From: Schizochytrium sp. TIO01
Taxonomy: Eukaryota; Protista; Bigyra: Labyrinthulomycetes
DNA length: 64,000 bases
Direction of reading: 5' to 3'
Assembly (NCBI GenBank): GCA_004764695.1
Contig: SMSO01000025.1
Coordinates: 1,736,001 to 1,800,000 of the forward strand
Shown here: positions 6,501-11,140 of the stretch, piece by piece
Layout: every line of letters begins with the position of its first letter
How positions within the stretch are numbered: position 1 is the first letter of the stretch
Position numbers and translations under genes: made by a program
Notes under the pieces: model-generated
The model's database searches: none
What the model was told of the DNA's origin: nothing
The model's input: only the letters and a program-made list of their open reading frames with translations

Positions 6501-7276
6501 ATCCCAGGCCGTAGAGCAGCATCCGTGGAACTCCCTTTCGAGGGATTTCTCTGCGATACGGTGATTCACTCTGCAACAGAGTTCTGTACCCTGAACGACC
6601 TTTTCCAAGGCTCTATTCAATGCATCTGTGATAGAGATCCTACTACATACTAACTATAGTATCAACACCTATGGAATTCTCTAGAGACCCTCTGGTCAAT
6701 CGAACTATGCTTTCTGCTTTCCAGACGCCGCGAGAGGTCTCGAAGCGCTCGCGGCCAATCCGAAGTGAAGCCATACTGCCAACACGTTTGGCTCTTCGTG
6801 AGCATAGCGTGCGGGAACTCGTCTAGACTGTCTTTAGCGTGTCCTGCGGTATGCCAATAGACAGGACAGCTCGAGCACCGTCGTGTTTGATCTAGGTACC
6901 TCGTCATCTTCATCTTCATCTCAAGAGAAGAAATAAAACTGAATTCCTTAAATCCAACCCATCAAATTCAAGCTCAAGCTCAAGCTCAAATTGATACTTG
7001 AGTTGGAATCCTCTGATCTAAAACTTTCAAGTTTGAGTTCCTGGAACGTTTACAAATTGTAGCGGAAAAAGGCCTTAATTTTGCGCATACTCCAACTTGG
7101 AGTCCGCACTTCAAGTCCAGCTCGAGGCTGCTGCGACTCGACAAAGGTGGAGCGAAACCCTTTCGTGGCAGCTCTCAGGCTTTGAAAGACTGCACAGGAC
7201 CTTTTGTCTTTCGCTTCGGTTCTCCAAGTAAGTCTTCGAAGAATCGATCTGAGCAAGTCGCCTGCGACTCATCGAC

Positions 7277-9364
7277 ATGAGCGGCTTCGTGGTGGAGGAT
7301 GCACAGCGGCGGCTTGTGGCGCTGCAGACTCTATGCCAGCAAAATGACGCTGCAGCGCGAGCACTAGCAGCTTTAGTGGCTCGGCAAGGGTCTGCGGACC
7401 TTGGCCGTGACGCGAAAAAGCTCGGCGGAGCGGCGGAGCAGTTGGAGCAGCAGGCAAGACGCTGCGAGGATATGGTTGCCAAGCTTCAGGCCGAAGACGT
7501 CGCCTTCCTTGCAGCAGTCAAGGAGGGCGCAGCTGCTACCGGAGCTCAGTCGTTCAAGGCAAAGAAGCTACGGAGTGACTACGACCGCAGACTCAAGGTT
7601 GGCGAGTGTGTGCGAGGTGCGGAGCAGATTATCAAGCGGGCTAGACTTGTGATTGCGGAGCTCAGGAAACAGCAGAGATCCGCAGAAGAAGCAGAATTGG
7701 CTGCCAAAAAGGCTCGCGAAAACTCTACGAAAGCATCCAAAAGTAATCTTGATGCTGGTGGAATTGAAGCTGAAGATGATGGAGAAAAAGCGCGCGCAAG
7801 GAGACGACTGGAGGCCAGAAGGATGCAGCAAATGCTAGATGAAGAGCAGCAGACTCAGGTCCTAGAACACAAAATGATGCAACAGCAATCGTATGCGCTG
7901 AGAGAATATAATGAACAGGCATCGACGCAGAGTGAACAAACTGCATTGAGGGAGGTTGCTAGGAGTGCACGCATGGTTGAAGAAATGGCTACGGAAGTTG
8001 GATCGTTACTTGAGGTGCAGACAGATGACGTCAACCGCCTCGAGGCCAATACGGATGACTCGGTTGCTCGCACCATGGAGGGCGTGCACGAGCTTAGCCG
8101 CGCACGAAAGAAGCAAGCAAGCACAGGAACAATCAAAGCAACGTTTGGCACTGCCACAGTTGGCACGCTTGTAGGTATTGTCGGCGGACCTGTTGGCATG
8201 GTTATTGGTGCTGCAGCAGGTGGTGTGGTTGGTATGGTTGCTGGAAAAGGTGTAGCCGCCGTGAAAAGGCGTTCTATCAATGCAGAGACAAGGCGCATTA
8301 AGGCCTTGCTCTCGGCGCGGAAACAACGCACCGGAGAGTTTACTCTTCAAGTATATGCTTATGAAGTTCAACAATGGTCCTACATGCTGCGCAAGTGGGT
8401 GCAGAGTGAGCGGGTTTGGGCAGATGAATTTGGCGAACCTATTCGCGGTGCTCATCCTGAAAAAGAAACAAGTGCTGCGGAAGCTCGTCTGCAGCTCTTA
8501 GCAGAAGCTCGATCTGATAGCAATAACCTCACCCCTGAGGAGGAGGCAGAAATTGAAGCTGTTCATGAACGTGAGCTTGAGTATGATGTGTCCTGGCACT
8601 GGGCATCCTCCAAATGGGATGTTGTCATGGATAGGCCCAACACAGATCTTGGCGGATGGGATTTTGCGTCCAGAATGACATCGGACACATGGTATGCAGA
8701 AGCTAAACGAAGTTGTGTAGTTCGCCGGCGACTTTGGGTGCGCTATCTTACAGGAAAGCCTGGAACATCGCCTGCCCACCGTGAAGCAGCTGAGAAGCTT
8801 TTGCGTGCTCGACAGCTTCAGGAATCTATGGATGGCAATGCTGCTTTCACAGATTCAGACCGGGAAACACAGAATCTATGGAATGGGATTTATCGGAACT
8901 CTGTAACTACCAATACACTATTGAATGAGTCTTTAAATCGCGCAACCGAGCAAGGAGAGCAGATTAGTCGTGCGGAAAGAAATGCTGCTATTGTTGGCGA
9001 TGCAGCCACTTTTACGGATCGGATCAATCGGGCGTCACGGCTTTCTGGTGCGATGCGCAATTTTGTTACATGGCAGCGTGGTGAGCTGCAGCATGTTGAT
9101 GCAGCAACACGTGAGGAGATGCTACGACGTGAGCGTGCTATGCAAAAGGCGGAGGCTCGGGCAGCACAGCAACGTGCTGCTGCGAGTGCAAACCCTATTA
9201 ATCTAGAAGACGAGGCGGCATCCAACTTTAGTGAGAACTTGTACATTGCCGAACGGATGTCGTCTGAGCTTGATGCGCAAAATAAGCAACTCGATCGTAC
9301 TGTTAACGCTATTGAACGTGGCAACGCATCGGTGCTGAAAATCACACGCAAGCTCAAATCTTAA
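7277..9364 (+). CDS. Multi-SNARE protein: syntaxin(17)-like Qa + Gly-zipper hairpin + DysF domain + SNAP25/29-like Qb and Qc motifs
   Basis: Helical N-terminus; syntaxin-type heptads EVGSLLEVQTDDVNRLEANTDDSVARTMEGVHELSRA; Gly-rich hydrophobic segment GTLVGIVGGPVGMVIGAAAGGVVGMVAG; DysF motifs YEVQQW...WHW...W...DLGGWDFA...VRRRLWVR; then EQGEQISRAE and MSSELDAQNKQLDR. Confidence 0.85.
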   Translation: MSGFVVEDAQRRLVALQTLCQQNDAAARALAALVARQGSADLGRDAKKLGGAAEQLEQQARRCEDMVAKLQAEDVAFLAAVKEGAAATGAQSFKAKKLRSDYDRRLKVGECVRGAEQIIKRARLVIAELRKQQRSAEEAELAAKKARENSTKASKSNLDAGGIEAEDDGEKARARRRLEARRMQQMLDEEQQTQVLEHKMMQQQSYALREYNEQASTQSEQTALREVARSARMVEEMATEVGSLLEVQTDDVNRLEANTDDSVARTMEGVHELSRARKKQASTGTIKATFGTATVGTLVGIVGGPVGMVIGAAAGGVVGMVAGKGVAAVKRRSINAETRRIKALLSARKQRTGEFTLQVYAYEVQQWSYMLRKWVQSERVWADEFGEPIRGAHPEKETSAAEARLQLLAEARSDSNNLTPEEEAEIEAVHERELEYDVSWHWASSKWDVVMDRPNTDLGGWDFASRMTSDTWYAEAKRSCVVRRRLWVRYLTGKPGTSPAHREAAEKLLRARQLQESMDGNAAFTDSDRETQNLWNGIYRNSVTTNTLLNESLNRATEQGEQISRAERNAAIVGDAATFTDRINRASRLSGAMRNFVTWQRGELQHVDAATREEMLRRERAMQKAEARAAQQRAAASANPINLEDEAASNFSENLYIAERMSSELDAQNKQLDRTVNAIERGNASVLKITRKLKS

Positions 9365-9922
9365 TTTTTGTTTTAATTTAGTGGAAAATCAAATTTATAT
9401 ATTTGACAACCAATCCGTGTAGAGCAATTTTCTTTAATTCATGTTGCGAATTCTGTATGCCATTCAAGGCAAATTATTGCAAGATGCAATAAGCACCTAG
9501 CTTCCTCTAATACTGTAAGACCTCTGTATTATCAAAAACCCAAATTCATAGGCTTATTTTATGAGTATTGGATGTAACACCTCTCATGGTTAAACTCTGT
9601 TGAGCAGTTCGATGTAATGATGGGGGACCTTTTTATTGGTACCTGAGTAAAAATATCTTTATGGGAGATTTTGCAAATAGGATCGATTCATCATTTTGTT
9701 TCATATAAGATGACAGGACAACACATGTAAACATAAAAATGTTTGAAAGGAAGAGCATCTAAGTTCTTCCACTTGGATGCTTGGTGTTATTTGATTAGTA
9801 ATTCACAAATATACATGTACGAATTCGCAGTTAATAATGATGTGGCCAATAAACGTGAAGCTTACAATACAAACACGCATACCTACTAAAGCAATTTCCA
9901 ATTTCAAGATATAAAAATTAAT

Positions 9923-11140
9923 CTAGCCACCGATTTTGACCATAGGTCTGTTTACACCTTTAGCAATACTCTCTGGACTATCATGTCCACCAAGCTTAGC
10001 ATGCTTACGACCGAGTACAGCCTCAATTGTTTCAACAAGATCTTCTTGGCCTGCGCCGCTCCGTAATTTATCGCGCAGAGACACTTCATCAGTACCAAAC
10101 AAGCATGCTTTCATTGAACCATCTGCAGTAAGACGGAGGCGGTTGCAGGTCCCGCAAAATTGATCGGTCATTGAGGAAATAAATCCAACGCGTCCAACAA
10201 AACCTGGAACCTGCCACGTTTTGGACACAGTGTTGGCACCATCATGGACCCGCGTGCGTGTGAATTCAGGCCAGCGCTCACGAATCATGTCTACCATCTC
10301 GTAATAGGGAAGAATCGCCTTAGATTTCCACTTATTTTGATCGAAGGGCATAAACTCAATAAACCGAACTTCGAGGTCCAAGTCTCGGGTAAACTCAACA
10401 AAATCCAAAAGTTCATCGTCGTTAACACCTCGTTTCATGACGCAGTTTACCTTAACGCGCTCAAGCCCTGGCAATTCAGTGGCGCGCTTAATACTCGCAA
10501 GAACCTGTTCGAAACCTCGACGTCGCGTAATGAGTTCAAATTTTGCCGGGACAAAGGTATCTAGGCTTACGTTGAGGAGATTTACTCCACTTTCTACAAG
10601 AGGTTCCATCTTACGCTTCAATAGAATTCCATTTGTTGTGATAGCGAGGTCACGAATGCCAAGTTTCGAAGTTTCCCACATAATTCGATGATGCTGGGAC
10701 GGAGGAGAGGCTCTCCTCCAGTGAGCCGAATCTTGTCAACTCCTCTTTCGACGAAGACAGACGCAATGCGCACGATCTCATCATCTGTCAGAAGGTCACT
10801 GTTTGGTGTAAGATCAACACCTTTCTCTGGCATACAATAGGTGCACCTCAAGTTGCAGCGTTCAGTGAGGGAGATGCGCAAATAGTTATGAATACGGCCA
10901 TGTGAGTCCACGAGTGGCACTTTGTCCTCACTTTCGCTTATTGCAGTAGCACTACGCGCCAAGCTGTGCGCCGCTGCACTTGCCGCACCAGGAACTTGCG
11001 CATGACGAAGTTGGCTTTGTTCGTGGCGAGTATGACTTTCCAAGCGAAGTTCTGACCTTCCCCCGTAGTGCCGCGTCTGACTCGGCAGAAACTTAATACG
11101 GCCCGTCTTAGCAATTCCTCGCGTAGTTCTCCACATCATC
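9923..11140 (-). CDS. MOCS1A: GTP 3',8-cyclase (MoaA/MOCS1A/CNX2), radical SAM, with mitochondrial-type presequence; one frameshift near 10665
   Basis: [19 protein letters not shown] (CxxxCxxC), [39 protein letters not shown] and C-terminal IGG. ORFs 10618-11172 and 9923-10681 join as CGKLR-KLGIRDL if one A is restored. Start codon approximate (MMMW). Confidence 0.93.

What the first reader, a model, noticed from the sequence alone, without database searches (positions are those of the whole stretch)
7277..9364. A whole Qa-Qb-Qc t-SNARE in one polypeptide: STX17-like + DysF + SNAP29-like fusion
Seen in sequence: three SNARE heptad motifs, each with a candidate zero-layer Gln (aa 248, codon 8018; aa 559, codon 8951; aa 668, codon 9278). 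The first is syntaxin-type, follows a helical Habc-like region, and is followed by a GxxxG zipper (GTLVGIVGGPVGMVIGAAAGGVVGMVAGKG) and basic KRR. A DysF domain then precedes Qb (QGEQI.R.E) and Qc (M..ELD.QN..LDR) motifs. Established: syntaxin 17 uses a Gly-zipper hairpin anchor that leaves both termini cytosolic and pairs with the Qbc SNAP29 for autophagosome-lysosome fusion; DysF domains occur in ferlins, Pex30-type peroxins and the autophagy tether TECPR1. Inference: a hairpin anchor would let Qb and Qc fold back onto Qa in cis, giving a self-contained acceptor needing only an R-SNARE, with a built-in lipid-sensing module. I know of no described three-Q single-chain SNARE of this architecture.
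Basis: partly seen in the sequence, partly recalled or inferred. Interest (0 to 1): 0.92.

Follow-up and report, generated by a model that had tools for sequence, protein, structure and literature searches.

The report
One-protein Qa-Qb-Qc SNARE with DysF
A real, conserved protist gene encodes a syntaxin-17-like membrane-fusion protein that carries a lipid-binding DysF domain and two more SNARE helices behind its glycine-zipper anchor, so one chain seems to supply all three 'Q' helices of a fusion complex; I found this arrangement described only for engineered proteins.

Summary
Window 7277-9364 (+) is one uninterrupted 695-aa ORF. Q248, Q559 and Q668 are invariant in 7 orthologues and at least 90% conserved in 18 relatives that share as little as 19% identity with it.

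Family profiles give significant matches:
- DysF domains: dysferlin E=6.6e-10, and TECPR1 by fold.
- Motif 1: Qa syntaxins, with syntaxin-17 on top.
- Motif 3: Qc helices (SNAP-25 C-helix, syntaxin 8, SNAP-29 C-helix).
- Motif 2: clearly SNARE-like, but its class is ambiguous by sequence. The best solved match is the Qa Vam3; in the own genome the first matches are PF12352-type SNAREs.

A complex prediction (Qa piece + own VAMP7-like R-SNARE + C-terminal piece) scored 0.84 against a best control of 0.29. It gave a parallel, in-register bundle with Q248/Q559/Q668/R159 in one layer and motif 2 beside Qa.

The architecture recurs in at least 20 sequence clusters (labyrinthulomycetes, Paulinella, unnamed protists). 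In some variants FYVE or PX takes the place of DysF or is added to it.

Not shown: the hairpin topology, the 'SNAP29-like' label, and any autophagy role. Ten full-text literature searches found no natural single-chain Qabc SNARE, only a designed one from 2026.

Verdict: a new variant of a known kind, of high interest, resting on computational evidence only.

The parts
7277..9364 (+). Whole ORF, 695 aa plus stop; single-copy gene of the 64-Mb genome (G000:C24)
7067..9439 (+). Extent of RNA-like contig coverage in run X17. Pieces 7587-8412, 8394-8549 and 8534-9439 overlap and join the Qa motif to the end of the Qc motif without any joint; there is no coverage at 9440-9831.
   Evidence: the run's kind 'RNA' is the tool's guess
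7280..7744 (+). N-terminal three-helix region, Habc-like (aa 2-156; helices 2-39, 46-88, 93/108-156; pLDDT up to 97)
   Evidence: AF2; profile positions 4-198 align with Habc+SNARE of syntaxin-1A, Sso1/2 and Tlg2 at E 0.003-0.02
7937..8107 (+). SNARE motif 1, Qa type (aa 221-277; zero-layer Q248 = codon 8018)
   Evidence: syntaxin-17 1.3e-4, syntaxin 7 3.9e-4, syntaxin-1A 5.4e-4; own syntaxin L002 8e-6
8144..8263 (+). Only hydrophobic stretch of the protein: a Gly-zipper segment of 40 aa with a central, near-invariant GGP (aa 303-305). It is flanked by basic residues on both sides (RKKQ...K before; KRRSINAETRRIK, 8264-8302, after). Proposed re-entrant or hairpin anchor.
   Evidence: sub-threshold Pfam hits to C19orf12 and Gly-zipper families
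8333..8758 (+). DysF domain (aa 353-494), Trp-rich beta fold
   Evidence: dysferlin inner DysF 6.6e-10, myoferlin 1.7e-7, TECPR1 4.3e-6; Foldseek TM 0.62-0.71 to DysF domains; pLDDT about 90
8867..9049 (+). SNARE motif 2 (aa 531-591; zero-layer Q559 = codon 8951). It takes the Qb position next to Qa in the complex model; its class by sequence is ambiguous.
   Evidence: Vam3 2.6e-4; PF12352-type own SNAREs first
9050..9202 (+). Linker of 51 aa between motifs 2 and 3 (helix 604-636), without Cys
9203..9358 (+). SNARE motif 3, Qc type, at the extreme C-terminus with no anchor (aa 643-694; zero-layer Q668 = codon 9278)
   Evidence: SNAP-25 C-helix 1.8e-4, syntaxin 8 9e-4, SNAP-29 C-helix 0.035; own syntaxin-6-like gene

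Best explanation
The gene encodes a single-chain Q-SNARE ('Qabc') of a labyrinthulomycete-like stramenopile.

Anatomy:
- The N-terminal half is a syntaxin: a Habc-like bundle, then a Qa SNARE motif.
- A short basic linker follows, then a 40-residue glycine-zipper segment with a central GGP.
- Inferred: this segment dips into the cytosolic leaflet as a hairpin or re-entrant anchor, as in syntaxin 17, so the chain returns to the cytosol.
- There it continues with a DysF domain (inferred: a lipid-binding or membrane-sensing module held at the membrane surface).
- A 36-residue spacer follows, then a SNAP-25-like pair of SNARE helices joined by a 51-residue linker. The last helix (Qc) ends at the free C-terminus.

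Mechanism (supported by the model, inferred otherwise): motif 2 and motif 3 fold back in parallel onto the chain's own Qa motif. This gives a ready three-helix acceptor that needs only one R-SNARE on the other membrane (VAMP7-like or Ykt6-like; both are present in the genome). Together they zipper into a QQQR four-helix bundle and drive fusion.

Which membrane (inferred, with lower confidence, about 0.4): relatives carry FYVE or PX where this protein has DysF, or in addition to it. The compartment is therefore probably endolysosomal or autophagic and rich in PI3P.
For: - The ORF is intact and single-copy.
- Full-length orthologues and complete MMETSP transcripts exist: 640 and 677 aa, 'type:complete'.
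- RNA-like contigs run collinear from the Qa motif to the Qc end.
- The three zero-layer Gln and the layer residues are conserved down to 19% identity.
- Motif 1 matches only Qa helices, with syntaxin-17 best and the own syntaxin.
- Motif 3 matches only Qc helices: SNAP-25 C, syntaxin 8, SNAP-29 C, syntaxin 6 and the own syntaxin-6-like gene.
- The motif 2 profile matches a solved SNARE helix at 2.6e-4. In the own genome it ranks PF12352-type SNAREs (Sec20, Vti1) before any Qa.
- DysF is supported by sequence and by fold.
- Complex prediction: ipSAE 0.84 in three runs, against a best of 3 controls of 0.29. The mark was reached by 51 of 78 solved complexes and by 2 of 108 mismatched pairs. The runs agree in at least 93% of contacts; partner pLDDT is at least 76.
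- The contacts are in register: 238 with 548/549 (layer -3), 252 with 562, 259 with 569, R159 with Q668, 148 with 658, 155 with 665. The bundle is therefore parallel, with Q248/Q559/Q668/R159 in one layer.
- Motif 2 lies beside Qa and motif 3 beside R. Qa and Qb are adjacent in real bundles (PMC10398888, abstract).
- Cytosolic topology of the C-terminal half: both flanks of the anchor are basic. In relatives a FYVE finger, a cytosolic PI3P reader, sits directly behind the same anchor.
- Engineered single-chain t-SNAREs are fusogenic with one v-SNARE (bioRxiv 10.64898/2026.05.04.722779), so the principle works.
Against: - No experiment bears on this protein.
- Pfam reaches no cut-off on the single sequence and sees nothing in motifs 2 and 3.
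- Motif 2's best solved match is a Qa (Vam3), not a Qb. hhalign against the own Vti1 was uninformative.
- AF2 draws residues 213-345 as one straight helix, with pLDDT 59-71 over the anchor, so no hairpin is modelled.
- The hydrophobic stretch (33-40 aa) is shorter than I recall for the two transmembrane helices of human syntaxin 17 (from memory).
- The complex score may reflect the model's memory of solved SNARE bundles. It shows likeness, not binding. The job also differs from the tool's calibration: three chains, cut pieces.
- Cis assembly within one molecule, as opposed to assembly between molecules, was not tested.
- The RNA status of the runs is a guess, and two of the four runs laid nothing.
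Confidence: 0.65

Rival explanations
1. It is a syntaxin-17-like Qa SNARE whose C-terminal coils are not core fusion helices. They would be a regulatory module: an autoinhibitory lid on the Qa motif, a platform for tethers, SM proteins or NSF/SNAP, or helices that pair with the Qa motifs of neighbouring molecules. The real Qb/Qc would then come from other genes, for example the separate Qb-PH-Qc gene.
For: Motif 2 has no clear Qb signature. Pfam does not recognise motifs 2 and 3. The genome keeps a full set of other Qb and Qc SNAREs and a separate Qbc-like gene, L034. SNARE-like decoy helices are known (tomosyn; from memory).
Against: The Gln at both zero layers and the layer residues are conserved over deep divergence. 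Motif 3 is consistently Qc-like. The in-register QQQR bundle scored 0.84 against 0.29 for the best control. The Qb-linker-Qc geometry, with the end at the C-terminus, is that of working Qbc SNAREs.
Confidence: 0.17
2. Same single-chain SNARE, but working elsewhere. The short Gly-rich hairpin and the DysF domain (which binds phosphatidic acid in Pex30) would place it on ER subdomains, lipid droplets or peroxisome contact sites of these oil-rich protists, rather than on autophagosomes or endolysosomes.
For: A 33-40 aa hydrophobic hairpin with a central proline suits monolayer or monotopic insertion (sequence). There are weak matches to C19orf12 and to Pex24p-type DysF. The Pex30 DysF binds phosphatidic acid at ER-lipid droplet sites (PMC12101077 and PMC12101078, abstracts). 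Syntaxin 17 has been linked to lipid droplet formation (bioRxiv 10.1101/124065, title and abstract).
Against: Relatives carry FYVE or PX at or near the same place, which points to PI3P membranes. No localisation data exist either way.
Confidence: 0.2
3. The hydrophobic segment is a single transmembrane pass. DysF and motifs 2 and 3 would then be luminal or extracellular and could not join the cytosolic Qa motif.
For: AF2 shows one continuous helix through aa 213-345. The stretch is too short for two full membrane spans.
Against: The flank after the segment is the more basic one (6 K/R in 13 aa), so by the positive-inside rule it should stay cytosolic. FYVE fingers follow the same anchor in relatives. 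DysF domains and SNARE motifs are cytosolic wherever they are known (established knowledge). The central GGP is almost invariant.
Confidence: 0.05
4. Gene-model artefact: two neighbouring genes, or an assembly chimera, read as one ORF.
For: None beyond the rarity of the architecture.
Against: There is one open frame without stops. The same full-length architecture occurs in at least 17 other 50%-identity clusters from independent sources, including complete transcripts. Overlapping contigs span the junctions.
Confidence: 0.02

Closest known systems
Syntaxin 17 (Qa SNARE with a glycine-zipper hairpin anchor)
   Same: Qa motif directly before a Gly-zipper hydrophobic segment with a central G-G-P turn, then basic residues. 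Syntaxin-17 is the best solved Qa match. The nearest language-model clusters carry STX17_N. A nematode hairpin SNARE (P0056) is among its relatives.
   Different: About 365 residues (DysF + two SNARE motifs) follow the anchor instead of a short tail. The hydrophobic segment is shorter. The margin over syntaxin 7 and syntaxin-1A is small. No phylogeny with curated SNARE sets was possible.
SNAP-25 family Qbc SNAREs (SNAP-25/23/29/47, Sec9, plant SNAP33)
   Same: Two SNARE motifs in the order 'Qb position then Qc', joined by a linker of about 50 aa, with no membrane span of their own and the Qc helix at the very C-terminus. Motif 3 matches the SNAP-25 and SNAP-29 C-helices.
   Different: Covalently joined to the Qa partner. 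No Cys cluster in the linker, and PF00835 matched nothing in the genome. Motif 2 does not match any SNAP-25/29 N-helix. No free-standing close relative of 97-308 aa was found.
Engineered single-chain t-SNARE (PDB 9Y5F/9Y5G; bioRxiv 10.64898/2026.05.04.722779)
   Same: All three t-SNARE helices in one chain, working with a single v-SNARE. The family profile hits this design at E=4e-6.
   Different: The design places the SNAP-25 helices before syntaxin with short linkers and one helix antiparallel. The natural protein places Qa first, then the anchor, a lipid-binding domain and long linkers, and is modelled all-parallel.
SNAREs fused to lipid-binding domains (yeast Vam7: PX + Qc; SNAP-47; from memory)
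   Same: A phosphoinositide or lipid reader in the same chain as SNARE helices. Relatives of this protein use PX or FYVE.
   Different: Those proteins supply one or two helices and have no membrane anchor. Here the lipid module sits between the anchor and the Qbc part of a three-helix chain.
DysF domains of dysferlin/myoferlin, TECPR1 and Pex30-type peroxins
   Same: Sequence (E down to 6.6e-10) and fold (TM 0.62-0.71); invariant Trp/Arg pattern.
   Different: A single, non-nested DysF in a SNARE. No C2, tectonin or reticulon-like parts.

Membership tests
SNARE superfamily, Qa (syntaxin) type - motif 1 | Heptad SNARE motif of 16 layers with Gln at the zero layer, most similar to Qa helices | tested here: met
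   Layers conserved. The profile hits only Qa helices: syntaxin-17, 7, 1A, 13, Sso1, Tlg2 and Vam3. The own syntaxin L002 scores 8e-6. Pfam PF05739 on the single sequence is only 17.1 bits, below the 26.8 cut-off.
SNARE superfamily, Qa (syntaxin) type - motif 1 | N-terminal three-helix Habc domain | tested here: inconclusive
   AF2 gives three long helices at aa 2-156 with pLDDT up to 97. Profile positions 4-198 align with syntaxin-1A, Sso1/2 and Tlg2 at E 0.003-0.02. No Pfam Syntaxin hit; a FYVE-tailed relative, P0031, just reaches Syntaxin_2.
Syntaxin 17 | Hairpin anchor of two glycine-zipper helices that leaves both ends in the cytosol | tested here: inconclusive
   A Gly-zipper segment with near-invariant GGP and basic flanks is present. 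Pfam Gly-zipper and C19orf12 hits are sub-threshold. AF2 shows a straight helix. Topology cannot be tested in silico here.
Syntaxin 17 | SNARE motif groups with syntaxin 17 rather than with other Qa classes | tested here: inconclusive
   Syntaxin-17 is top at 1.3e-4, against syntaxin 7 at 3.9e-4. Atlas clusters with STX17_N score 0.94. PF26585 is not in the local library. No curated reference set was available for a tree.
Syntaxin 17 | Tail-anchored: only a short tail after the hairpin; the Qbc partner (SNAP29) is a separate protein | tested here: not met
   366 residues follow the anchor, including two SNARE motifs.
SNAP-25-type Qbc SNAREs - motifs 2 and 3 | C-terminal helix of Qc type ending at the C-terminus | tested here: met
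   SNAP-25 C-helix 1.8e-4 to 1e-3, syntaxin 8 9e-4 to 4e-3, SNAP-29 C-helix 0.035, syntaxin 6 0.29. The own syntaxin-6-like gene scores 2.7e-6, 0.008 and 0.0066.
SNAP-25-type Qbc SNAREs - motifs 2 and 3 | N-terminal helix of Qb type | tested here: inconclusive
   The best solved match is the Qa Vam3 (2.6e-4) and there is no Qb chain. In the own genome PF12352-type SNAREs (L028, L034, Sec20, Vti1) rank before Qa, at E 0.006-0.12. P0011 shows V-SNARE_C at E=0.077. In the complex model it sits beside Qa, as Qb does.
SNAP-25-type Qbc SNAREs - motifs 2 and 3 | Palmitoylated Cys cluster or SNAP-25 linker family (PF00835) | tested here: not met
   No Cys at aa 495-695. PF00835 has no match in the genome, though nothing rang in the controls either. 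This feature is absent from SNAP-29/47 too (from memory), so it does not define Qbc as a whole.
QabcR four-helix SNARE complex | Three Q helices and one R helix, parallel and in register, with a 3Q:1R zero layer | tested here: met
   Prediction only: ipSAE 0.84 against a best control of 0.29; the mark was reached by 51 of 78 solved complexes and 2 of 108 mismatched pairs. Contacts place Q248, Q559, Q668 and R159 in one layer. Binding itself is not shown.
DysF domain | Trp/Arg-rich beta fold similar to the ferlin and TECPR1 DysF domains | tested here: met
   Dysferlin inner DysF 6.6e-10, myoferlin 1.7e-7, TECPR1 4.3e-6. Foldseek TM 0.62-0.71, probability 1.00. Pfam Pex24p is sub-threshold in relatives.

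The most novel reading that the evidence does not exclude
This gene belongs to a widespread but undescribed protist family of natural single-chain t-SNAREs. The pattern is a hairpin-anchored, syntaxin-17-like Qa, then a swappable lipid reader (DysF, FYVE, PX, or FYVE plus DysF), then a Qbc pair in one polypeptide. Such a chain would be a self-contained, lipid-addressed acceptor that fuses membranes with a single R-SNARE. That makes it a two-protein fusion machine. It may also be a fused counterpart, or even a forerunner, of the STX17-SNAP29 pair.
Probability: 0.45. Interest if true: 0.9.

Novelty: new variant of a known kind. Interest (0 to 1): 0.8.

Why it matters
SNARE fusion is taught as the meeting of three or four separate proteins, and how the Q-SNARE acceptor complex is assembled and kept productive is a long-running question. 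A natural protein that ties Qa, Qb and Qc together would have several consequences:

- It would fix stoichiometry and register by covalent linkage.
- It would give a minimal two-component system for reconstitution.
- It would show how a lipid-binding domain can be built into the acceptor.
- It would bear on the origin of the syntaxin-17/SNAP-29 pair.
- It would be a natural precedent for the single-chain t-SNAREs that protein designers built in 2026.

Some thraustochytrids are used for genetics and for oil production (from memory), so the predictions may be testable in a relative of this organism.

Tried and rejected
I have no genomic context for the orthologues and could make no sub-range alignments from loci.
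- A word-indexed search with the C-terminal 176 aa found nothing. This says only that no close free-standing relative of 97-308 aa shares words with it.
- Pfam on natural C-terminal fragments found no SNARE family.
- PF00835 had no match anywhere, controls included. PF26585 (STX17_N) is not in the local library.
- hhalign of the C-terminal profile against the own Vti1 and the own syntaxin was uninformative; only the syntaxin-6-like Qc gave an in-register match.
- The nematode hairpin SNARE P0056 could not serve as a labelled syntaxin-17 reference. Its motif scores higher with syntaxin 13 and 7 than with syntaxin-17, and its BLASTP match to the window protein is weak (E=0.004).
- Read laying (4,501 letters, within the operators' limit): runs X1 and X5 laid nothing, and X10 covered only the neighbouring gene. 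Only X17 informs on this gene, and its RNA status is a guess.
- Ten literature searches found no natural three-Q single-chain SNARE. This is absence in the held library, not proof.
- Cluster look-ups gave few organism names, so the taxonomic range is only sketched.
- The Atlas hits for the C-terminal part (V-SNARE_C, SNAP-25; scores 0.87-0.89) are below the level that counts as more than a lead.
- I built no tree. The 60-residue motifs and the lack of labelled references would not have resolved the class.
Full report
1. THE OBSERVATION

Window 7277-9364 (+) is a single open reading frame of 695 codons from ATG to TAA. An in-frame stop lies nine codons upstream of the ATG.

I placed the 16 SNARE layers around each Gln with the spacing of syntaxin-1A. 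All three stretches then show hydrophobic or small residues at the layer positions, and these are conserved column by column in seven orthologues. The Gly-zipper string and the KRR that follows it are as quoted.

Pfam on the single sequence gives only sub-threshold hits: SNARE PF05739 E=0.0055 at aa 252-284, and C19orf12 and Gly-zipper families over aa 265-340. It gives nothing for the C-terminal coils.

2. IT IS A REAL, CONSERVED GENE

The gene is single-copy in a 64-Mb, 37-contig genome.

A word-indexed search found six full-length homologues of 41-50% identity. One is from the thraustochytrid Mucochytrium quahogii (lineage), one is labelled Durusdinium trenchii, and one is a complete MMETSP transcript of 640 aa.

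An exhaustive HMMER search of 1.84 billion representatives with the family profile found 235 proteins at E<=1e-3. Among the best 150, 16 clusters besides the window protein share the full order Qa motif - Gly-zipper - DysF - motif 2 - motif 3. One further protein, from Paulinella micropora (Rhizaria), adds a FYVE finger.

In the 18-sequence alignment A3 (19-50% identity to the window protein), Q248, Q559 and Q668 are each conserved in at least 90% of the sequences. The GGP turn, the Gly positions of the zipper and the Trp/Arg pattern of the middle domain are invariant or nearly so.

Transcript evidence:
- Orthologous transcripts are annotated as complete.
- In run X17, overlapping contigs cover 7587-9439 without a joint. 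Coverage as a whole runs 7067-9439 and is absent at 9440-9831. The tool only guesses that this run is RNA.
- In run X10, the neighbouring gene shows a spliced joint.

3. WHAT THE PARTS ARE

With profile A3 against all solved chains:
- The middle domain matches the inner DysF domain of dysferlin (E=6.6e-10), full-length dysferlin (1.4e-8), myoferlin (1.7e-7) and the TECPR1 DysF (4.3e-6).
- Motif 1 matches only Qa helices: syntaxin-17 best (1.3e-4), then syntaxin 7, syntaxin-1A, Sso1, syntaxin 13 and Tlg2.
- The N-terminal 200 profile positions align with Habc+SNARE of syntaxin-1A, Sso1/2 and Tlg2 (E 0.003-0.02).
- Motif 3 matches the C-terminal (Qc) helix of SNAP-25 (1.8e-4) and syntaxin 8 (9e-4).

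With the C-terminal profile A2, motif 3 also matches the SNAP-29 C-helix (0.035) and syntaxin 6.

Motif 2 matches a solved SNARE helix at 2.6e-4, but that helix is the Qa Vam3. No Qb chain appears.

I also made a within-genome test. HMMs of the three motifs were run against the open frames of all SNARE loci fetched from this genome (the loci were named by Pfam).
- Motif 1 picked the syntaxin (8e-6) and two more SNARE-domain (PF05739) genes.
- Motif 3 picked the syntaxin-6-like Qc (2.7e-6).
- Motif 2 picked PF12352-type SNAREs first: a 99-aa V-SNARE_C protein (0.006), the Qb motif of a Qb-PH-Qc gene (0.022), Sec20 (0.03) and Vti1 (0.12). The first Qa came only at 0.55.

These scores are weak. 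Motif 2 is a SNARE motif whose class is not settled by sequence.

AF2 with A3 gave mean pLDDT 79. It shows three N-terminal helices, a long helix 213-345, a beta domain 355-494 (pLDDT about 90), and helices 526-586, 604-636 and 643-694. Foldseek placed the beta domain on TECPR1, dysferlin and myoferlin DysF domains (TM 0.62-0.71).

4. DO THE THREE HELICES WORK TOGETHER?

I sent one complex job. Chain 1 was aa 213-288 (Qa). Chain 2 was the SNARE motif of the genome's best VAMP7-like R-SNARE (L036, longin + synaptobrevin). The partner chain was aa 526-695.

- Score: 0.84 in three runs, against a best of three controls of 0.29.
- Calibration: the mark was reached by 51 of 78 solved complexes and by 2 of 108 mismatched pairs.
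- The runs agree in at least 93% of contacts, and the partner's pLDDT is at least 76.
- The tool warns that this job is unlike its calibration and that a pass may come from memory of solved SNARE complexes.

The contact list is the informative part. Interface residues follow the predicted layers on all four helices. The lowest-error pairs are 238 with 548/549 (layer -3), 252 with 562 (+1), 259 with 566/569 (+2/+3), R159 with Q668/N669 (0), 148 with 658 (-3) and 155 with 665 (-1).

The model is therefore a parallel, in-register bundle with Q248/Q559/Q668/R159 in one layer. Among the listed lowest-error pairs, Qa pairs only with motif 2 and R only with motif 3. Qa and Qb are neighbours in real bundles (PMC10398888, abstract). 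This shows that the C-terminal coils look like Qb and Qc helices to the model. It does not show binding, and it does not tell cis assembly from intermolecular assembly.

5. THE ANCHOR AND THE TOPOLOGY

The only hydrophobic stretch is aa 290-329. It has 40 residues, is Gly/Ala/Val-rich, and has GGP at its centre. It carries 4 K/R in the 13 residues before it and 6 K/R in the 13 after.

Arguments for a hairpin or re-entrant anchor with both ends cytosolic (all inference):
- Both flanks are basic.
- The stretch is too short for two full membrane spans, yet it has a conserved central turn.
- SNARE motifs and DysF domains are cytosolic wherever they are known.
- In relatives a FYVE finger follows the same anchor directly (P0031, P0043, P0052, P0055).

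Against: AF2 draws a straight helix, with lowered confidence.

About 100 of the 150 best hits are Qa-motif and/or Gly-zipper proteins. They include a nematode protein with a typical syntaxin-17-like tail (P0056), a Tetrahymena protein (P0026) and an amoebozoan FYVE form (P0052). The language-model atlas puts the N-terminal 345 residues nearest to animal clusters that carry STX17_N (score 0.94, 206 shared features). That is a lead only.

6. A MODULAR FAMILY

Among the relatives the module behind the anchor varies:
- DysF: this gene and 16 clusters.
- FYVE + DysF: Paulinella.
- FYVE followed by motifs 2 and 3: P0035, P0039, P0071.
- An N-terminal PX with motifs 2 and 3: P0032.
- FYVE alone, or nothing.

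In the variants I read by eye (P0032, P0035, P0039), a Gln stands at the expected place in motifs 2 and 3. This pattern supports the reading 'lipid reader + Q-SNARE set'. Because FYVE and PX read PI3P, it points to endosomal, vacuolar or autophagic membranes.

The own genome has no second hairpin Qa. It does keep a separate Qbc-like gene with a PH domain between its two motifs (L034). It also has VAMP7-like and Ykt6-like R-SNAREs.

7. COMPARISON WITH WHAT IS KNOWN

- As a Qa SNARE, membership is met.
- As syntaxin 17 in the strict sense, one defining feature is not met: it is not tail-anchored with a short tail and a separate SNAP29. Two others are inconclusive.
- As a SNAP-25-type Qbc, the arrangement and the Qc helix are met. 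The Qb class is inconclusive and the Cys linker is absent.
- 'SNAP29-like' is not the best label.
- The DysF assignment is firm.

Ten full-text searches found no natural protein with Qa, Qb and Qc motifs in one chain. [quoted passage not shown] A 2026 preprint built single-chain t-SNAREs that fuse membranes with one v-SNARE. The family profile even hits that design (9y5f_B, E=4e-6).

8. VERDICT

The central interpretation, a single-chain Qa-Qb-Qc SNARE with a built-in DysF module, is the best-supported reading (confidence about 0.65), but it rests wholly on computation.

Still open: the class of motif 2, the topology of the anchor, cis versus trans assembly, and the compartment.

It is a new variant of a known kind, part of a sizeable unannotated protist family, and worth experimental follow-up.

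- Read laying was kept to 4,501 letters.

Noticed in passing
L034 (G000:C34:4609046-4612201), minus-strand ORF 796-1851 and the 90 bases after it: A separate Qbc-like SNARE with a PH domain between its two motifs: an N-terminal V-SNARE_C-like motif (E=0.0047), PH (PF15409/PF00169), and a C-terminal '...AIDVQNSE' motif. The frame stops inside the Qc-like motif and the heptads continue in the +1 frame ('LEDLHTSVEQRG...'). This is either an apparent 1-nt frameshift or an assembly error. Its architecture recalls SNAP-47 (from memory).
   Followed up: partly
proteins P0031, P0043, P0052, P0055 (FYVE tail); P0035, P0039, P0071 (FYVE + motifs 2 and 3); P0032 (PX + motifs 2 and 3); P0020 (FYVE + DysF + motifs 2 and 3): Relatives carry other lipid-binding domains in place of DysF or in addition to it. 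P0052 is from the amoebozoan Stenamoeba, P0020 from Paulinella and P0026 (short form) from Tetrahymena, so hairpin-anchored Qa SNAREs with lipid readers are not confined to stramenopiles.
   Followed up: partly
window 9923-10681 (-) and 9780-9886: The convergent downstream gene has an ORF of 252 aa that looks like the C-terminal half of a MoaA/MOCS1-type radical-SAM enzyme by eye (not scanned). Contigs of run X10 skip 9780-9886 with CT..AC ends, that is, a GT..AG intron on the minus strand. This also shows that X10 holds spliced RNA.
   Followed up: no
G000:C13:4130954-4131154 (-) in a 3802-aa open frame (L046); G000:C3:2047092-2047313 (+) in a 3859-aa open frame (L026): Two very long open frames of the same genome contain DysF-like stretches (E=4.9e-10 with the family profile; E=0.22 with the single protein). 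They may be ferlin- or TECPR-like giants.
   Followed up: no
protein P0002 (718 aa): The closest named homologue (48% identity) is filed under the dinoflagellate Durusdinium trenchii, although its nearest relatives are thraustochytrid proteins. It is either a true alveolate orthologue or a contaminant in that assembly.
   Followed up: no
window 6761-6958: A contig of run X17 lies about 100 bases upstream of the gene's own coverage, in a stretch with no open frame of 120 aa or more. It may be a 5' exon, an upstream transcript or stray DNA.
   Followed up: no
protein P0001 against window aa 56-695: A JGI record of 640 aa is the same protein without its first 55 residues. Its last 30 residues differ from the window's at one place (N678D, seen when comparing the ends; the middle was not checked residue by residue). 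It is probably a 5'-truncated transcript contig of another strain.
   Followed up: partly
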